Below, one piece after another: positions 1 to 34,322 of a stretch of DNA of 64,000 nucleotides. The notes under the pieces were generated by a model. It was not told the origin of the DNA. It did not search any database and was given only the letters and a program-made list of their open reading frames with translations. Made by a program: the position numbers and the translations under genes. How positions within the stretch are numbered: the first letter of the stretch is position 1; every line of letters begins with the position of its first letter. The DNA lies in the IMG/VR virus record IMGVR_UViG_3300044701_002789, positions 62,001 through 126,000 of that record. One strand, given 5' to 3'.

Positions 1-6
1 GTCAAG

Positions 7-80
7 CACCTCAGGTAGGATTCGAACCTACGGCTAACCGCTTAGAAGGCGGATACTCTAGTCCACTGAGTTACTGAGGC
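7..80 (-). tRNA. tRNA-Arg(UCU)
   Basis: Reverse complement GCCTCAG...CTGAGGT-G forms the acceptor stem; anticodon loop CT-TCT-AA; T loop TTCGAAT; CCA not encoded. Confidence 0.93.
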
Positions 81-103
81 AAAAGACAACTTAATGTTGT
101 CAA

Positions 104-224
104 TAGGAACGCTGGGGATTGAACCCAGAACCTCCCACTTATTCGGTATAGAGGGTACTGCCCCCCCATTAACAATCTTTTGATACCGTAAGGTGGGTGC
201 TCTAACCACTTGAGCTACGTTCCC
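104..224 (-). tRNA. tRNA, probably Ile(UAU), with a 47-nt insertion in the anticodon loop
   Basis: Acceptor GGGAACG/CGTTCCT-A, D arm GCTC/GAGC, anticodon stem CCCAC/GTGGG and T arm CTGGG-TTCAATC-CCCAG are intact, but 54 nt (139-192) replace the 7-nt loop. Confidence 0.8.
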
Positions 225-233
225 AATCAGACA

Positions 234-262
234 ATCGTATGGTATTTATACCAGATTGTCAA
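234..262 (-). promoter_or_regulatory. sigma70-type promoter (TTGACA-17-TACGAT) with an embedded late promoter TATAAATA (243-250), upstream of the interrupted tRNA
   Basis: -35 at 257-262, -10 at 234-239, 17-nt spacer. Confidence 0.65.
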
Positions 263-345
263 TGGGAGCAGGGGGACTTGAACCCCCACGGGCACTGCCC
301 AACGGATTTTAAGTCCGGTGCGTCTACCGATTCCGCCACGCTCCC
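263..345 (-). tRNA. tRNA-Leu(UAA), intronless
   Basis: GGGAGCG...TGCTCCC-A acceptor stem, anticodon loop CT-TAA-AA, long variable arm. Confidence 0.95.
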
Positions 346-354
346 GATGGGACA

Positions 355-383
355 ATCATAAGGCACGAACCTCAGATTGTCAA
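355..383 (-). promoter_or_regulatory. sigma70-type promoter for tRNA-Leu
   Basis: TTGACA (378-383), 17 nt, TATGAT (355-360). Confidence 0.7.
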
Positions 384-425
384 GGGGTGGAGTGGAGAGC
401 GGGTGGCGCTCCCTCAACCACCCCT
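383..425 (-). other. GC-rich two-stem hairpin heading the tRNA array
   Basis: AGGGGTGG/CCACCCCT outer stem plus GGGAGCG/CGCTCTC inner stem. Confidence 0.55.
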
Positions 426-427
426 AC

Positions 428-457
428 AAGATACCAGACAGATGGGGTGCCTGTCAA
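428..457 (-). promoter_or_regulatory. sigma70-type promoter
   Basis: TTGACA (452-457), 18 nt, TG-G-TATCTT (428-433); the -35 box overlaps the TGA stop of the Hc1-like gene. Confidence 0.5.
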
Positions 458-645
458 CCCCCCTTTACCTCTTTCCTGGTGTTCTTCTCTTCTGTGATCT
501 CGGCGCGGCGAGACTTGACTAGTTTAGTAATTTCTTGCAATGCCTTGCGTGCGCGGGTGCCTGCAGCATTATTACCATTAGTAAACTTTTCGTCTTCAAC
601 TTTCCAAGACTCAAAGGCGTCAAGAAGTTCTTGTGATGTAGACAT
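454..645 (-). CDS. Histone H1-like (Hc1 family) small DNA-binding protein
   Basis: KFTNGNNAAGTRARKALQEI motif typical of Hc1-like proteins; GGAGA RBS favours the ATG at 645; late promoter TATAAATA at 670-677. Confidence 0.7.
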   Translation of the reverse strand: MSTSQELLDAFESWKVEDEKFTNGNNAAGTRARKALQEITKLVKSRRAEITEEKNTRKEVKGG

Positions 646-681
646 AATAATCTCCAATAATTAAAAATTTATTTATACATG

Positions 682-3787: not shown

Positions 3788-3841
3788 TCCGTTTTTAATC
3801 TATATATGAACCTACATAGTCATATTAGCAATTCTTATCTA

Positions 3842-4267
3842 ATGACCTGGAAATATAACAATCAAGAGTTTACAGAAGTCCCAAAAGACATGGAAGGTTT
3901 TGTTTACCTTATTACAAATCTCACCAATGATAAAAAATACATTGGAAAGAAACACTTTTGGACAAGACAAAAAGATCGTAAAACAGGTCGCAGAAAAAAG
4001 AAAGAAAGTGATTGGAAAAAATATTTTGGTTCTTGTGATGAATTAATTGAAGACGTAAAAAATCTCGGAGAAGATAAATTTCTCCGAGAAATTTTATATC
4101 TATGTCCTCACAAGAAATCTATGAGTTTTTATGAGACTATGGAACAATTCAAAAGAGATGTAATTCTTAGAGAAGACTACTACAATACAAATGTTGAAGG
4201 TAAGTTCTTTAGTAGTGAAGTAGAGAATATTTATGAGATTGTTCTTAAAAGCTCTAAAGCTTTATAA
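3842..4267 (+). CDS. GIY-YIG family nuclease (141 aa); the only credible plus-strand gene in the window
   Basis: GFVYLITN...KYIGKK motif; start reassigned to ATG 3842 because the upstream extension overlaps another gene. Confidence 0.8.
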   Translation: MTWKYNNQEFTEVPKDMEGFVYLITNLTNDKKYIGKKHFWTRQKDRKTGRRKKKESDWKKYFGSCDELIEDVKNLGEDKFLREILYLCPHKKSMSFYETMEQFKRDVILREDYYNTNVEGKFFSSEVENIYEIVLKSSKAL

Positions 4268-22974: not shown

Positions 22975-23357
22975 TTTGTTCCGCCTGTGTCAAGTCGTTT
23001 TTTTATAAAGTCAATCTGTTCTTTATTTAGAATTTTTAAAGCTTGTAATGCTTTTTCATTATTATAACCATAATATTTTTTTATGTATTCTAAATCCGTG
23101 ACCTTATCTTTTCGGATCCAAGGAGAAAATCTTTTCCTTTTCCTTAAAGTATTTAGATAAAACGCATATTGCATATCTTTATCTATATGACTATTCATGT
23201 TCATTTCATTAGCAAATAATATTGCATCAATATGACCAGATAGACATTTATTTATAATATAAGGTGGATAATCCTTGATGGAAGTTGGATCTTCGTTCAT
23301 CAAGTTCTTTTTAGTATTATTAATAGAATTCAACCAATCCTTTAATTCATGTGTCAT
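22971..23357 (-). CDS. gp62: Clamp loader small subunit gp62
   Basis: YPPYIINKCLS...ANEMN...KRKRFSPW...YYGYNNEKA. Confidence 0.9.
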   Translation of the reverse strand: MTHELKDWLNSINNTKKNLMNEDPTSIKDYPPYIINKCLSGHIDAILFANEMNMNSHIDKDMQYAFYLNTLRKRKRFSPWIRKDKVTDLEYIKKYYGYNNEKALQALKILNKEQIDFIKKRLDTGGTK

Positions 23358-24418
23358 CTAATAATCTCCAATTCACTGCCGGGTTCCCATATCTCTAAGG
23401 TAGTTCTCAATCTGTTTTCTTCAATTAGTTTTTCATACCTTTTAGATGATTTTTTCTTCCACCAAGTAATAACATCATTGACATCATGCTTAAACTCAGA
23501 AATATAATACCTTTTCTTTTCTGTTAATTTTTTAGCATTTTCAATTGCAGTATTGAATTGATTCAACTTGGTCTCATCCTTTAATGAATTTCGGATAATA
23601 GAAATCATCTTTTGCTGGATTTTCAATTTTTTGGAAGACTTGTCTGCAGGAACCAATCGTTCCCCATTATTTCTCTCATTGAACCACCAAAAGAAATCTC
23701 TAAATTCATCATCATGGAATAATGGAAGAAAATTACTTTCAGTGTCCCCAATATGTTTGAGATATGGTTTAAGACCATCATACATGGAAACGCCCTTAGT
23801 TGTTCCGTACAATGAAGTAGTCTCAAAATATTTTAAATCTGTACCATACTTTGTATCAAATTGATTTTTGAGTTCTTTAGAGCACGCTAAAAGCGCAAGA
23901 AGTTTACCCCCAAGATAATTATATCCAAATGGTTGAACAGGTACAATATTAAACGCCATCACGAATTCATTATTAATAGTTTCCAGAGGAAGAACTTTAT
24001 TAAAGTATTCGTTTCTTGGTTTTGAGTTAATAGTCGGAGACCCAAATCTAACTACCCCAAGAACCTTTTTAGTGTTAGTTTCTTCAACTATCCATTTATG
24101 GGTTCTACCTGGAATTGCTTCTTCTACGGCATTTGAAGCAGTTAAATTTAAAGTTTCCGAATACAACCACTGATTAAATTTAGATGTAGGTTTGGAACTT
24201 GTATCAACAACATGAATACAAATATCCATATCATTTGGATGCATTTGAAATGCATCAAACATTTCAGTTTCCGCACCAAACAAACATCCAGATCTAGAAG
24301 TTATTCTGTCTTTCTTCACAAAACGAAGATAATCATCAATACGATTAAATTGAGAATAGTAATTTATAAACTTATCTGCCGCATAAATGGCATCTTGTTC
24401 GGTTAAAATCAGTGTCAT
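23354..24418 (-). CDS. DUF4338-family (Druantia DruA-like / Mom-related) protein
   Basis: GYNYLGGKLLALL, ETTSLYG and YDGLKPY..IGDT motifs. Confidence 0.65.
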   Translation of the reverse strand: MTLILTEQDAIYAADKFINYYSQFNRIDDYLRFVKKDRITSRSGCLFGAETEMFDAFQMHPNDMDICIHVVDTSSKPTSKFNQWLYSETLNLTASNAVEEAIPGRTHKWIVEETNTKKVLGVVRFGSPTINSKPRNEYFNKVLPLETINNEFVMAFNIVPVQPFGYNYLGGKLLALLACSKELKNQFDTKYGTDLKYFETTSLYGTTKGVSMYDGLKPYLKHIGDTESNFLPLFHDDEFRDFFWWFNERNNGERLVPADKSSKKLKIQQKMISIIRNSLKDETKLNQFNTAIENAKKLTEKKRYYISEFKHDVNDVITWWKKKSSKRYEKLIEENRLRTTLEIWEPGSELEIIR

Positions 24419-33926: not shown

Positions 33927-34322
33927 CTAGCTATTATTATAAAGCTTTTCTAGGAGTATTTTAGCATCTGTAACACTACTAATGTATCCCATCTTTCTAG
34001 ATAAATTGCTTTTAGTGTTACCCATGTTAGGGTTTTCTGCTTTTTCTATAAATTGTTGGTGTAGTAAAATCATTTCAATATCTTTTGATTCTGACATAGT
34101 AAGTACATCCTTTAAATTTAAAATAAACAAATCATCAGTAGTAGTCTTTAACCAAGGTTCAATCTTATAACCATCTTTACCTAATTTGGATTTATAAGAT
34201 TTAATTACTACTGGATTATTAATAAGAAGAACATTATTGCCATTTTCTTCTGATGGAACTACTCTGGCAAATATTTCTTCACCTGTCTTTAGTTTTATTG
34301 TGGCATAAAAATCATCTTCCAT
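33927..34322 (-). CDS. Conserved hypothetical protein (Sm-like beta fold suspected)
   Basis: FYATIKLKTGEEIFA...PW; sits between uvsW and gp55 as in cyanophages. Confidence 0.75.
   Translation of the reverse strand: MEDDFYATIKLKTGEEIFARVVPSEENGNNVLLINNPVVIKSYKSKLGKDGYKIEPWLKTTTDDLFILNLKDVLTMSESKDIEMILLHQQFIEKAENPNMGNTKSNLSRKMGYISSVTDAKILLEKLYNNS

What the first reader, a model, noticed from the sequence alone, without database searches (positions are those of the whole stretch)
104..224. Phage tRNA with a structured 47-nt insertion inside the anticodon
Seen: every tRNA arm is intact, but the anticodon loop holds 47 extra nt, closed by CGGTAT/ATACCG with a stacked GGGGGG/CCCTCT stem. The gene has its own sigma70 box pair and a late promoter. 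Excision registers: after position 34 or 35 gives UAU-AA (Ile); after 36 gives UAC (Val); after U33 gives AAU, with the insert ending in G. Ile(UAU) is favoured because it restores A37/A38, the D and variable loops look Ile-like, and the neighbours Arg(UCU) and Leu(UAA) also read A-ending codons of an AT-rich genome. Established: bacterial tRNA introns are typically self-splicing group I/II introns far longer than 47 nt, and bacteria lack the archaeal/eukaryal splicing endonuclease. The bulge geometry here does not match a canonical bulge-helix-bulge. Inference: this is either a new nuclease-plus-ligase splicing route, a masked tRNA that resists host anticodon nucleases until activated, a decoy, or a pseudogene.
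Basis: partly seen in the sequence, partly recalled or inferred. Interest (0 to 1): 0.82.

Follow-up and report, generated by a model that had tools for sequence, protein, structure and literature searches.

The report
Cyanophage isoleucine tRNA gene split by insert
A cyanophage gene for the isoleucine tRNA that reads AUA carries a 47-base hairpin-forming insert in the middle of its anticodon; it is real but seen in one phage genotype only, and nothing yet shows that it is spliced out.

Summary
Window 224..104 (- strand) is a complete tRNA with 47 extra bases in the anticodon loop (Rfam tRNA model, 53.8 bits). Seven uninterrupted homologues show that precise removal restores the loop CUUAUAA, so this is tRNA-Ile(UAU). 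These include cultured Synechococcus phages B3/B23 and the closest syntenic relative, L008.

The insert is not a group I intron, a known ribozyme or a bulge-helix-bulge intron. It occurs in one clonal genotype only: four IMG/VR contigs that are 100% identical. Covariation therefore cannot be tested. The exons carry no private substitutions.

New context:
- The tRNA array holds a free-standing homing-endonuclease gene related to I-Ssp6803I. It is absent from both relatives checked (B3, L008), whose gene is intact.
- Fourteen bases of the insert are a near-perfect inverted copy of the adjacent promoter spacer.
- The same phage has at least four other tRNA genes with 39-49-base inserts of an unrelated, conserved type. 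They lie beside a Ro-like RNA-binding protein gene.
- No RNA ligase, RtcB, kinase or splicing endonuclease appeared in about 98 kb inspected.

Best reading (about 0.45): a recent DNA-level insertion that leaves a non-decoding allele. Close rival (about 0.32): an intron spliced by proteins.

The parts
104..224 (-). Interrupted tRNA-Ile(UAU) gene, 121 nt
   Evidence: Rfam RF00005 match at 53.8 bits over model positions 1-71. Removing the 47 nt in silico gives a tRNA that ARAGORN calls tRNA-Ile(tat).
190..224 (-). 5' exon: acceptor 5' strand, D arm, anticodon-stem 5' strand and loop bases C-U-U (the next A belongs to either side)
   Evidence: Identical to B3 tRNA-Ile(TAT) except one D-loop base, and that base is shared with L006, L010 and L011.
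143..189 (-). 47-nt insert (equivalent register 142-188), lying between anticodon positions 34/35 or 35/36
   Evidence: A gap of 47 columns against seven uninterrupted homologues. No other copy occurs in the window or loci, the phage database, IMG/VR beyond the same phage, or the metagenome and genome collections.
183..188 (-). 5' arm of the closing helix (CGGUAU)
   Evidence: Pairs with 149-144 in the minimum-free-energy and centroid folds.
144..149 (-). 3' arm of the closing helix (AUACCG)
150..167 (-). Inner hairpin: G run, loop CAGUA, CCCUCU. It has 6 bp, 2 of them G.U, and stacks directly on the closing helix.
   Evidence: The G.U pairs become A.C mismatches on the opposite strand, so the stem is specific to the tRNA-sense RNA (read from the sequence).
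168..182 (-). 15-nt unpaired bulge. Together with the next three G it holds the 14-nt stretch that is an inverted near-copy of the upstream spacer.
   Evidence: CCCATTAACAATCT at 165-178 (+) against CCCATTGACAATCT at 253-266 (-). With at most 1 mismatch, the only sites in 64 kb are these two and 374-387 (-). Local alignment against shuffles: 8 of 2000 ungapped and 3 of 2000 gapped reach the observed score. In a genome-wide tiling it only ties for the top score.
104..142 (-). 3' exon: loop bases A-U-A-A, anticodon-stem 3' strand, variable loop, T arm, acceptor 3' strand and discriminator A
   Evidence: 100% identical to B3, L007 and L008.
225..262 (-). Spacer with the gene's own promoters, which also folds as a hairpin: TTGACA-17-TACGAT (262..234) and the late-type TATAAATA (250..243)
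   Evidence: Promoter scan. TATAAATA search, in which all 10 matches in the window lie on the coding strand. Hairpin fold at -12 kcal/mol, z -4.6.
263..345 (-). Upstream neighbour tRNA-Leu(UAA), uninterrupted
6..80 (-). Downstream neighbour tRNA-Arg(UCU), uninterrupted

Best explanation
This is a genuine T4-like cyanophage gene for tRNA-Ile(UAU). In one phage lineage it acquired a 47-bp hairpin-forming piece of DNA exactly in the middle of the anticodon.

I think the insert most likely arose at the DNA level and recently, in a tRNA array crowded with homing-endonuclease genes. It could be filler copied partly from the neighbouring spacer during repair of a break in the palindromic anticodon-coding DNA. 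Or it could have been kept because it destroys an endonuclease target.

The gene is still transcribed from its own early and late promoters. The transcript has a split anticodon, so it cannot decode AUA unless something removes the hairpin, and nothing known in bacteria or phages would do so. On this reading the present allele is non-decoding: a young pseudogene, or an allele that gives immunity to the endonuclease.

Shown:
- The identity of the gene.
- The size and position of the insert.
- Its restriction to one genotype.
- The absence of ribozyme, group I and bulge-helix-bulge features.
- The co-occurrence with the endonuclease gene.

Inferred:
- The DNA-level origin.
- The link to the endonuclease.
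- The lack of splicing.
For: 1. All copies of the insert are one clonal sequence. The four IMG/VR contigs are 100% identical over up to 7.6 kb.
2. All seven other homologues are uninterrupted: B3, B23, L006-L011. They include L008, which has the same Leu-Ile-Arg-Gly-Lys-Tyr gene order and flanking genes 73-77% identical at the nucleotide level.
3. No Rfam intron or ribozyme family matches the insert, and there is no bulge-helix-bulge (sequence).
4. Fourteen nt of the insert are a 13/14 inverted copy of the -35/spacer sequence about 75 nt upstream. A gapped alignment extends into the tRNA-Leu 3' end. This is what break repair with templated filler would leave.
5. A free-standing PD-(D/E)XK gene lies about 900 bp away in the array: Pfam PDDEXK_5 at E 1.6e-17, PDB 2OST (I-Ssp6803I) at E 9e-6. 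[quoted passage not shown]
6. That gene is absent from L008, where the Lys-Tyr spacing is about 70 bp against about 640 bp. It is also absent from all cyanophage records, including B3 and B23.
7. Homologues of this endonuclease sit inside the tRNA arrays of unrelated phages.
8. No RNA ligase, RtcB, Pnk or EndA family was found in 40 window ORFs, nor on record for about 35 kb downstream.
9. Zero private substitutions in 74 exon bases is compatible with a recent event. By my estimate the neutral divergence since the insertion would be below about 0.04 per site.
Against: - AUA makes up 20.9 per 1000 codons, 26% of Ile codons, in a genome of 33.6% G+C.
- The gene is one of four individually promoted tRNAs for A-ending codons. 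Relatives keep it intact, so its loss should carry a cost.
- The junctions are perfectly clean, with no base lost or duplicated.
- The insert ends in a perfect 6-bp helix that brings the two exon ends together. Its inner stem uses G.U pairs that work only in the sense RNA. These are features expected of a spliced intron.
- The resemblance to the spacer is only about 70% with gaps outside the 14-nt core. It is not unique genome-wide.
- The endonuclease link rests on one insert-bearing genotype against two relatives without the gene. The likeliest target of the enzyme is next to its own insertion site (tRNA-Lys/Tyr), not tRNA-Ile.
- The same phage keeps at least four other insert-bearing tRNA genes. 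It may therefore have a way to process such transcripts.
Confidence: 0.45

Rival explanations
1. The insert is a true intron removed by proteins. The 12-bp coaxial helix presents both junctions in one internal loop. An endonuclease of the host or the phage cuts there, and an RNA ligase rejoins the halves to give tRNA-Ile(UAU). The DNA insert could spread, or be retained, together with a free-standing homing endonuclease. That would resemble the 'collaborative homing' of the psbA intron and F-CphI in cyanophage S-PM2.
For: - The exons are pristine and the promoters intact.
- Demand for AUA decoding is high.
- The junctions are clean, and a terminal 6-bp helix plus a sense-specific G.U stem hold the exon ends together.
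- Presence/absence among relatives is the pattern seen for mobile introns.
- The same phage has at least four more tRNA genes with 39-49-nt inserts in the anticodon arm. At least two become canonical tRNAs on removal of the insert: Asn-GUU and Gly-GCC.
- The insert module of those genes is conserved, with compensatory changes, in phages B3/B23 and in an Aeromonas phage.
- Short 'enigmatic' tRNA introns were reported in Lak megaphages (bioRxiv 10.1101/356790).
- There is a precedent for an intron paired with a free-standing endonuclease in cyanophages (PMC6083498).
- This phage itself has a group I intron in psbA.
Against: - No enzymatic tRNA splicing pathway is known in bacteria or phages.
- No ligase or splicing endonuclease was seen in about 98 kb.
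- There is no bulge-helix-bulge.
- The insert is unrelated to the conserved module of the other insert-bearing tRNAs: shuffle p 0.24-0.31 and no covariance-model hit at E<=1. Whatever handles those would not obviously recognise this one.
- Only one genotype carries it, so conservation or covariation cannot be shown.
- The fold is only z -1.9 against shuffles.
Confidence: 0.32
2. The unspliced, tRNA-shaped RNA is the product and has a job other than decoding. It could be a decoy or sponge for a host nuclease or enzyme that recognises the anticodon. Or it could be a ligand of the phage's Ro-like (DUF2828) RNA-binding protein, by analogy with bacterial Y RNAs that mimic tRNA.
For: - The tRNA body is intact and the promoters are strong.
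- A DUF2828/DUF7788 protein is encoded at the end of the same array. It matches phrog_850 'RNA-binding protein' at E 2e-151, and related Atlas clusters carry VWA_2 and TROVE.
- That gene is followed directly by four tRNA-like genes with a conserved inserted hairpin module. The same gene order occurs in B3.
Against: - The Ile insert lacks that module.
- Its relatives are ordinary tRNA-Ile genes.
- Only one genotype carries it.
- There is no evidence of any binding partner.
- The TROVE assignment of DUF2828 is a lead, not a test: the sequence search of the PDB found nothing.
Confidence: 0.1
3. The insert is a miniature transposable element (MITE-like, or a hairpin remnant of the IS200/IS605 type) that landed in the anticodon.
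For: It has perfect 6-bp terminal inverted repeats and an internal hairpin, and the insertion is clean.
Against: - There is no target-site duplication (sequence).
- There is no second copy in 64 kb plus about 35 kb of this phage.
- There is none in 50,697 phage records, none in IMG/VR apart from the same phage, and none in 185,579 genomes with a pattern that keeps the structure.
- At 47 bp it is shorter than known elements of either kind (own knowledge).
Confidence: 0.06
4. The insert is an assembly or sequencing artefact, or a self-splicing ribozyme.
For: None beyond the oddity of the structure.
Against: - The same sequence occurs in four assemblies from four samples.
- No Rfam ribozyme or intron match at E<=10.
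- Own knowledge: the smallest self-splicing group I introns are about 200 nt. A register that ends the insert in G gives AAU or an 8-nt loop, not the UAU of the homologues.
Confidence: 0.03

Closest known systems
'Enigmatic' short introns in tRNA genes of Lak megaphages (Devoto et al., bioRxiv 10.1101/356790)
   Same: Both are short inserts in the anticodon region of phage tRNA genes. Both are present in some phage genomes and absent from close relatives, identical wherever present, matched by no Rfam family, and without a known removal mechanism.
   Different: - The Lak phages infect Prevotella, and several of their tRNAs are affected.
- Their excision points were predicted with the eukaryotic tRNAscan model, which assumes position 37/38.
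- Here the insert splits the anticodon itself (34/35 or 35/36), in a cyanomyovirus, in a single genotype.
Group I introns in bacterial tRNA anticodon loops, e.g. Synechocystis tRNA-fMet with I-Ssp6803I (PMC1995217; PMC3984707)
   Same: The location is the same: the anticodon loop of a cyanobacterial-world tRNA gene. Both are associated with a PD-(D/E)XK homing endonuclease of the same Pfam family.
   Different: - Those introns are self-splicing ribozymes of about 200-650 nt, and the endonuclease gene lies inside the intron.
- Here the insert is 47 nt, has no Rfam Intron_gpI match, and does not follow the U...G splice-site rule in the register that restores UAU.
- The endonuclease gene is free-standing and about 900 bp away.
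Collaborative homing: the S-PM2 psbA group I intron plus the free-standing endonuclease F-CphI (PMC6083498)
   Same: Both are in T4-like cyanophages. An insert that lacks its own endonuclease gene interrupts a conserved gene while a free-standing endonuclease is encoded nearby. In S-PM2 the insert protects the phage's own copy from cleavage.
   Different: - In S-PM2 the insert is a proven self-splicing intron and the endonuclease target is known to be the intron insertion site.
- Here neither splicing nor the target has been tested.
- The endonuclease is separated from the insert by three tRNA genes.
Archaeal and eukaryal tRNA introns (bulge-helix-bulge; EndA/TSEN plus RtcB or Trl1)
   Same: Both are short, non-catalytic inserts in the anticodon arm that pair so as to hold the exon ends together. 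In eukaryotes tRNA-Ile(UAU) is also one of the intron-containing tRNAs (own knowledge).
   Different: - There is no bulge-helix-bulge here: both junctions lie in one 4x5 internal loop.
- The position is 34/35-35/36, not 37/38.
- No EndA or RtcB was found in the parts of the genome seen.
- The host is a bacterium.
The conserved insert module in other tRNA genes of this phage, of phages B3/B23 and of Aeromonas phage Ahp1 (found here)
   Same: The same phage has tRNA genes with 38-49-nt inserts in the anticodon arm. At least two of them become canonical tRNAs when the insert is removed in silico.
   Different: - Those inserts share an A-rich lead, a covarying 6-bp hairpin and a C-N-GCAA motif.
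- They sit mostly in the 5' strand of the anticodon stem (27/28 or 29/30).
- They are conserved across phage families and cluster beside a DUF2828 gene.
- The Ile insert has none of these features.
Intervening sequences of bacterial 23S rRNA, excised by RNase III without religation (own knowledge)
   Same: Both are hairpin-shaped extra segments, inserted into a structural RNA gene in some strains only and handled by host RNases.
   Different: Fragmented rRNA still works. A tRNA cut in the anticodon does not, so excision without ligation would not rescue decoding.

Membership tests
tRNA (Rfam RF00005), isoacceptor Ile(UAU) | Cloverleaf arms and conserved tRNA positions | tested here: met
   53.8 bits against a gathering score of 29, over model positions 1-71.
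tRNA (Rfam RF00005), isoacceptor Ile(UAU) | A 7-nt anticodon loop with UAU | tested here: not met
   The loop is 54 nt in the gene. It becomes CUUAUAA only after the 47 nt are removed, as in seven homologues.
Group I intron | Conserved P1-P9 catalytic core, about 200 nt or more | tested here: not met
   No RF00028 match at E<=10 in window 1-600. The same model finds this phage's psbA intron at 80.7 bits.
Group I intron | 5' exon ends in U and the intron ends in G, in the register that restores the tRNA | tested here: not met
   The registers that restore UAU end the insert in A. The register ending in G gives AAU or an 8-nt loop (sequence).
Small self-cleaving ribozymes (hammerhead, twister, hairpin, pistol, hatchet) | A match to the family model | tested here: not met
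   No such match overlaps 143-189 at E<=10.
Bulge-helix-bulge tRNA intron | Two 3-nt bulges on opposite strands, separated by a 4-bp helix, each holding a splice site | tested here: not met
   Both junctions lie in one internal loop (CUUA on one side, AAUAA on the other) between the anticodon stem and the closing helix.
Bulge-helix-bulge tRNA intron | EndA-type endonuclease and RtcB- or Trl1-type ligase available | tested here: inconclusive
   None among 40 window ORFs, nor in the precomputed Pfam hits for about 35 kb downstream. About 125-160 kb of the phage, and the host, were not seen.
Phage tRNA 'enigmatic introns' (Lak type; a descriptive class) | A short non-ribozyme insert in the anticodon arm of a phage tRNA gene, with presence/absence among relatives and identical sequence where present | tested here: met
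   The class is described in 10.1101/356790.
Phage tRNA 'enigmatic introns' (Lak type; a descriptive class) | Removal from the RNA | not testable with these tools
   No transcript data are available. It was not shown for the Lak phages either.
Conserved insert module of this phage, B3 and Ahp1 | A-rich lead, covarying 6-bp hairpin and C-N-GCAA motif (model R1) | tested here: not met
   R1 recovers all seven members at 34-45 bits but gives no hit at 143-189 at E<=1. Pairwise similarity is no better than shuffles.
MITE or IS-derived element | Terminal inverted repeats | tested here: met
   A perfect 6-bp repeat, CGGTAT/ATACCG.
MITE or IS-derived element | Target-site duplication and multiple copies | tested here: not met
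   No duplication at the junctions. No second copy anywhere searched.
Collaborative homing pair (insert plus free-standing homing endonuclease) | A free-standing endonuclease gene near the insert, absent from genomes that lack the insert | tested here: met
   PDDEXK_5 gene at L004 3574-3969. It is absent from L008 and from B3/B23.
Collaborative homing pair (insert plus free-standing homing endonuclease) | The endonuclease cuts the uninterrupted allele at the insertion site, and the insert splices | not testable with these tools
   This needs a cleavage assay and RNA analysis.

The most novel reading that the evidence does not exclude
A T4-like cyanophage, or its bacterial host, removes short structured inserts from phage tRNA precursors with a protein endonuclease and an RNA ligase. 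This would be a tRNA splicing pathway in the bacterial world that uses neither a ribozyme nor a bulge-helix-bulge. The 47-nt insert in tRNA-Ile(UAU) would be one substrate. The conserved-module inserts in tRNA-Asn, tRNA-Gly and others, beside the Ro-like protein gene, would be another.
Probability: 0.25. Interest if true: 0.9.

Novelty: new member of a known kind. Interest (0 to 1): 0.6.

Why it matters
Short inserts in phage tRNA genes have been seen before but never explained. If any of them is spliced, bacteria or their viruses have an enzymatic tRNA splicing route so far credited only to archaea and eukaryotes.

This locus is a compact test case. It holds one tRNA with a private insert in the anticodon, and several more with a conserved insert module. 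It also holds a Ro-like RNA-binding protein gene, several homing-endonuclease genes and a bona fide group I intron, all in one phage. Cultured relatives (B3/B23) carry the conserved-module type.

If the Ile insert is not spliced, it shows something else: how selfish nucleases and break repair can knock out a useful phage tRNA gene.

Tried and rejected
- ARAGORN in default mode misses the gene. Its intron mode calls Val(UAC) with a 47-nt intron. I rejected this because seven homologues read UAU.
- A Rfam search of the region at E<=10 gives no ribozyme or intron family. The weak YrlA, CRISPR-repeat and mascRNA matches are far below their gathering scores.
- I tried bulge-helix-bulge geometry by hand. 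The two junctions face each other, so I rejected it.
- Searches for the insert elsewhere all came back empty or returned only the same phage:
  - exact and exon-anchored patterns in IMG/VR
  - an exon-anchored pattern in JGI metagenomes (0 hits)
  - a structure-keeping pattern in 185,579 genomes (0 hits)
  - blastn against phage records (nothing real)
  - the window and fetched loci (nothing above chance except the spacer match)
- Homology of the Ile insert to the conserved module of the other insert-bearing tRNAs is not significant.
- I looked for closer relatives through the neighbouring Hc1-like protein. Their tRNA arrays lack tRNA-Ile(UAU) altogether, so they do not help date the insertion.
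- I considered the insert as a minimal acceptor/T-arm mimic cut out by RNase P and RNase Z. The 12-bp coaxial helix fits. But the expected cuts give an 8-nt loop, there is no T-loop sequence, and a ligase would still be needed. I left this as an untested idea.
- I considered the insert as the remnant of a deleted group I intron. The splice-site rules do not fit.
- The walk along the contig for ligase genes stopped at record position 196.8 kb. About 125 kb of the 224.5-kb contig, or about 160 kb of the 258-kb genome, remains unseen.
Full report
**1. The observation.** On the minus strand, window 224..104 matches the Rfam tRNA model from first to last position (53.8 bits, E 8.5e-11). It has 50 nt where the model expects three loop positions. 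ARAGORN in default mode reports only the neighbours, tRNA-Arg(UCU) at 6-80 and tRNA-Leu(UAA) at 263-345.

Read directly, the anticodon stem CCCAC/GUGGG encloses 54 nt:
- CUUA;
- a 6-bp helix CGGUAU/AUACCG (188-183 with 149-144);
- a 15-nt bulge (182-168);
- a 6-bp stem formed by the G run (167-161) with CCCUCU (155-150), around the loop CAGUA;
- AAUAA.

Two pairs of the inner stem are G.U, so it forms only in the tRNA-sense RNA. The folds agree with this anatomy. As a whole the insert is only modestly more stable than shuffles (z -1.9).

The gene has its own TTGACA-17-TACGAT promoter (262..234) and a T4-type late box TATAAATA (250..243).

**2. Which tRNA it is.** Cultured Synechococcus phages B3 and B23 (Kyanoviridae) carry an annotated tRNA-Ile(TAT). 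It is identical to the two halves of this gene apart from one D-loop base, and it has the loop CTTATAA.

Five more uninterrupted homologues came from IMG/VR and JGI metagenomes: L006 to L011, including L007. The alignment gap is exactly 47 columns. The boundary is ambiguous by one A: 189..143 or 188..142.

So the insert splits the anticodon between positions 34/35 or 35/36. The ancestral anticodon is UAU. The Val(UAC) reading, which ARAGORN's intron mode prefers, and the AAU reading are excluded.

Every exon base of the window gene is shared with at least one homologue, so there are no private substitutions. L006, L010 and L011 show a compensatory G-C to A-U change in the acceptor stem. This shows that the family evolves under tRNA constraints.

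**3. How widespread the insert is.** The exact insert, and any insert of 20-50 nt between the same exon flanks, occurs in only four IMG/VR contigs of 224-258 kb. These contigs are 100% identical to the window and to each other over all overlaps, up to 7.6 kb. Together they amount to one genotype.

Other searches found nothing:
- the same pattern in JGI metagenome contigs;
- a structure-keeping pattern in 185,579 genomes;
- blastn against 50,697 phage records;
- the rest of the window and the fetched loci.

The closest syntenic relative is metagenome contig L008. It has the same order Leu-Ile-Arg-Gly-Lys-Tyr, flanking genes 73-77% identical at the nucleotide level, and a spacer about 26% diverged. 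Its tRNA-Ile gene is intact. The insert was thus gained within this lineage. With zero changes in 74 exon bases, an inactivating insertion would have to be recent: by my estimate, below about 0.04 substitutions per site.

**4. What the insert is not.** No Rfam intron or ribozyme family matches it at E<=10. The same library detects a real group I intron in this phage's psbA gene at 80.7 bits.

The registers that restore UAU do not obey the group I rule of a U before the intron and a G at its end.

The two junctions face each other across a single 4x5-nt internal loop at the base of the closing helix. A bulge-helix-bulge has two 3-nt bulges staggered by 4 bp, so this is not one.

There is no target-site duplication and no second copy, which argues against a miniature transposon.

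**5. Genomic context.** The window is from a T4-like cyanomyovirus. It encodes:
- ribonucleotide reductase;
- UvsX, UvsW and UvsY;
- gp41-like helicase, clamp and clamp loader;
- gp23 capsid protein and RegA;
- a late sigma factor.

The window has 33.6% G+C.

The interrupted gene is the second of an array of about 31 tRNA genes that runs off the window start. The first four tRNAs each have their own promoter and decode A-ending codons: Leu-UAA, Ile-UAU, Arg-UCU and Gly-UCC. In 51 window ORFs, ATA is 20.9 per 1000 codons (26% of Ile codons), AGA 27.0, TTA 25.2 and GGA 27.6. Losing this tRNA should therefore cost something.

**6. Homing endonucleases.** About 900 bp further along the array, between tRNA-Lys(CUU) and an unusual tRNA-Tyr, lies a 131-aa ORF (L004 3574-3969). 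It matches Pfam PDDEXK_5 (E 1.6e-17) and PDB 2OST, I-Ssp6803I (E 9e-6).

[quoted passage not shown] It recognises a 23-bp pseudo-palindromic target (PMC1995217, PMC3384342).

Where the phage gene is present and absent:
- It is absent from L008, where the Lys-Tyr spacing is about 70 bp against about 640 bp.
- It is absent from every cyanophage record, B3 and B23 included.
- Homologues sit free-standing inside the tRNA arrays of Mycobacterium phage Wilder and Vibrio phage Chester.
- T4 likewise has SegB in its tRNA cluster.

The same array region also holds an HNH gene, and a SegE-like GIY-YIG gene lies nearby.

So the genotype with the insert has the endonuclease, and the two relatives that could be checked have neither. 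This recalls the collaborative homing of the psbA intron and F-CphI in cyanophage S-PM2, where the intron protects the phage's own gene from its free-standing nuclease (PMC6083498).

The link is circumstantial. It rests on one genotype against two. By analogy with other free-standing endonucleases, the likeliest target lies next to the enzyme's own insertion site.

**7. A hint about origin.** Fourteen bases of the insert, read on the opposite strand (165-178), are CCCATTAACAATCT. About 75 nt upstream, at the junction of tRNA-Leu and the spacer (253-266, minus strand), the sequence is CCCATTGACAATCT. With at most one mismatch, the only sites in 64 kb are these two and the equivalent spot before tRNA-Leu.

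Local alignment of the insert to the flanking 360 nt beats all but 8 of 2000 shuffles ungapped, and all but 3 of 2000 gapped. The gapped alignment extends into the inverted tRNA-Leu T arm. In a genome-wide tiling the score only ties for first place, so I rate this as suggestive.

It fits filler DNA copied from nearby sequence in inverted orientation during break repair. At the RNA level the same stretch could form a 14-bp duplex, including one G.U pair, with the tRNA-Leu trailer.

**8. Other insert-bearing tRNA genes in the same phage.** Fetching the contig beyond the array (L020) showed a 512-aa DUF2828/DUF7788 gene. It matches phrog_850 'RNA-binding protein' (E 2e-151), and related Atlas clusters carry vWA and TROVE domains. 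It is therefore probably Ro60-like, although a sequence search of the PDB found nothing.

The gene is followed by a 740-nt stretch without ORFs that holds four tRNA-like genes of about 87-120 nt. Removing a 47-nt or a 49-nt insert from the 5' strand of the anticodon stem of two of them gives canonical tRNA-Asn(GUU) and tRNA-Gly(GCC). A third has about 39 extra nt in the anticodon loop.

Their inserts share a module: an A-rich lead, a 6-bp hairpin and a C-N-GCAA motif. The module is nearly identical in the Asn and Gly genes, although the tRNA bodies differ. The same module occurs in the 110-nt 'pseudo-tRNAs' of B3, B23 and L007, again next to the DUF2828 orthologue (71% amino-acid identity), and in Aeromonas phage Ahp1.

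Over seven copies the hairpin is 100% paired, and three of its six pairs show compensatory changes.

A covariance model of the module recovers all seven copies. It also gives a weak hit at the start of the DUF2828 gene. It does not hit the Ile insert at E<=1, and pairwise similarity is no better than shuffles.

This phage lineage thus maintains insert-bearing tRNA genes under selection, which raises the prior that such transcripts are processed or used. But the Ile insert is not of that type.

**9. Search for a splicing toolkit.** Pfam scans of 40 window ORFs found no RNA ligase, RtcB, polynucleotide kinase or EndA. Neither did the precomputed Pfam hits for about 35 kb downstream of the array, up to contig position 196.8 kb. 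Only an RNase T-like exonuclease and a small SNase-like nuclease appeared. About 125 kb of the 224.5-kb contig, or about 160 kb of the 258-kb genome, and the host remain unseen.

**10. Literature.** Full-text searches found no report of a tRNA intron in a cyanophage. The closest precedent is the 'enigmatic' tRNA introns of Lak megaphages. They are also polymorphic among genomes, identical where present, and unexplained (10.1101/356790).

**11. Verdict.** The feature is real and the tRNA identity is settled. The data are about evenly split between two readings.

I give 0.45 to a recent DNA-level insertion that leaves a non-decoding allele. It may be a repair scar, or an allele immune to an endonuclease, in an array rich in endonuclease genes. 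In its favour:
- the single genotype;
- the intact relatives;
- the resemblance to the spacer;
- the absence of any known mechanism or enzyme.

I give 0.32 to a protein-spliced intron. In its favour:
- the clean junctions;
- the terminal helix and the sense-specific stem;
- the intact exons and promoters;
- the high AUA usage;
- the other insert-bearing tRNA genes in the same phage.

Smaller shares go to a non-decoding tRNA-like RNA (0.10), a miniature transposon (0.06) and an artefact or ribozyme (0.03).

RNA evidence across the junction would decide between the two main readings.

Noticed in passing
L020 12362-12948 (same phage, about 7 kb beyond the window start; + strand of L020 = window minus strand): Four tRNA-like genes of about 87-120 nt lie in a 740-nt ORF-free stretch right after a DUF2828/DUF7788 (probably Ro60-like TROVE+vWA) gene. 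Each carries a conserved insert module in the anticodon arm: an A-rich lead, a covarying 6-bp hairpin and C-N-GCAA. Removing the insert in silico gives canonical tRNA-Asn(GUU) and tRNA-Gly(GCC). They could be spliced tRNAs or phage Y-RNA analogues.
   Followed up: partly
L007 2994-3103 and 3241-3351; L021 26705-26814 (phage B3); L014 597-710 (Aeromonas phage Ahp1): The same insert module occurs in 'tRNA-Pseudo/OTHER' genes of cultured cyanophages B3 and B23 and of a Straboviridae Aeromonas phage. It sits at position 29/30 of the anticodon stem, and the anticodon loops are intact (UCG, GUU). In B3 the gene lies beside the DUF2828 orthologue and is followed by tRNA-Arg, Gly and Ile(UAU).
   Followed up: partly
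L004 3574-3969 (-), equal to L020 6543-6938 (+): A free-standing homing-endonuclease gene related to I-Ssp6803I (PD-(D/E)XK) is inserted between tRNA-Lys(CUU) and tRNA-Tyr. It is absent from the syntenic relative L008. The adjacent tRNA-Lys differs strongly from L008's in its D loop and anticodon arm. Homologues lie inside the tRNA arrays of Mycobacterium phage Wilder and Vibrio phage Chester.
   Followed up: partly
window 225-262, 346-385 and 81-103 (- strand): Each spacer between the first tRNAs is at once a sigma-70-type promoter and a strong hairpin: GAC of the -35 box pairs with GTC just before or after the -10 box (z -4.2 to -5.7). In L008 the inner stem of the Leu-Ile spacer is kept by compensatory changes. 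The hairpins may serve as terminators or processing signals for the upstream tRNA.
   Followed up: partly
window 384-427 (- strand), with a TTGACA-18-TATCTT promoter at 457..428: A G+C-rich 44-nt nested hairpin (-26 kcal/mol, z -4.1) with its own promoter lies just upstream of the tRNA-Leu promoter. It matches no Rfam family, and its function is unknown.
   Followed up: no
L004 3484-3574 (-); L008 5-95 (-); L025 4135-4225: A 91-nt tRNA-Tyr(GUA) has an oversized D loop. Both ARAGORN and the Rfam scan missed it in this phage. It is conserved in L008, with compensatory changes in the anticodon stem.
   Followed up: no
L023 6588-9688 (same phage, about 21 kb beyond the window start): psbA is interrupted by a group I intron (Rfam RF00028, 80.7 bits, L023 7472-7674). 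ORFs follow, one of them with a NUMOD3 motif typical of homing endonucleases. The arrangement resembles S-PM2 psbA with F-CphI.
   Followed up: partly
L020 10650-10736, 12300-12360, 12590-12650 and 12770-12825; L004 about 4020-4075: A repeated long hairpin (AGATGnnTCAGCAAT ... nnCATCT) precedes the DUF2828 gene, each long tRNA-like gene and the PD-(D/E)XK gene. The motif TCAGCAAT recurs in its loop, in the insert module and at the start of the DUF2828 ORF. It may be a protein-binding or promoter element.
   Followed up: no
window 3841-4266 (+ strand): This is the only clear plus-strand gene in the first 64 kb. It is a SegE-like GIY-YIG homing endonuclease (precomputed Pfam PF19835), a third nuclease family near the array.
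   Followed up: no
window 33927-34322 (-), 23354-24418 (-) and 482-673 (-): Three proteins were noted: an Sm-like protein (PF16243), a protein with a DruA-like domain (PF14236), and a 63-aa Hc1 histone-like protein directly upstream of the tRNA array. The Hc1-like protein is 81-87% identical across hundreds of cyanophage contigs.
   Followed up: no
window, whole: All ten exact TATAAATA matches lie on the coding (minus) strand. The total number is no more than chance predicts, so the strand bias, not the count, marks them as likely late promoters.
   Followed up: no
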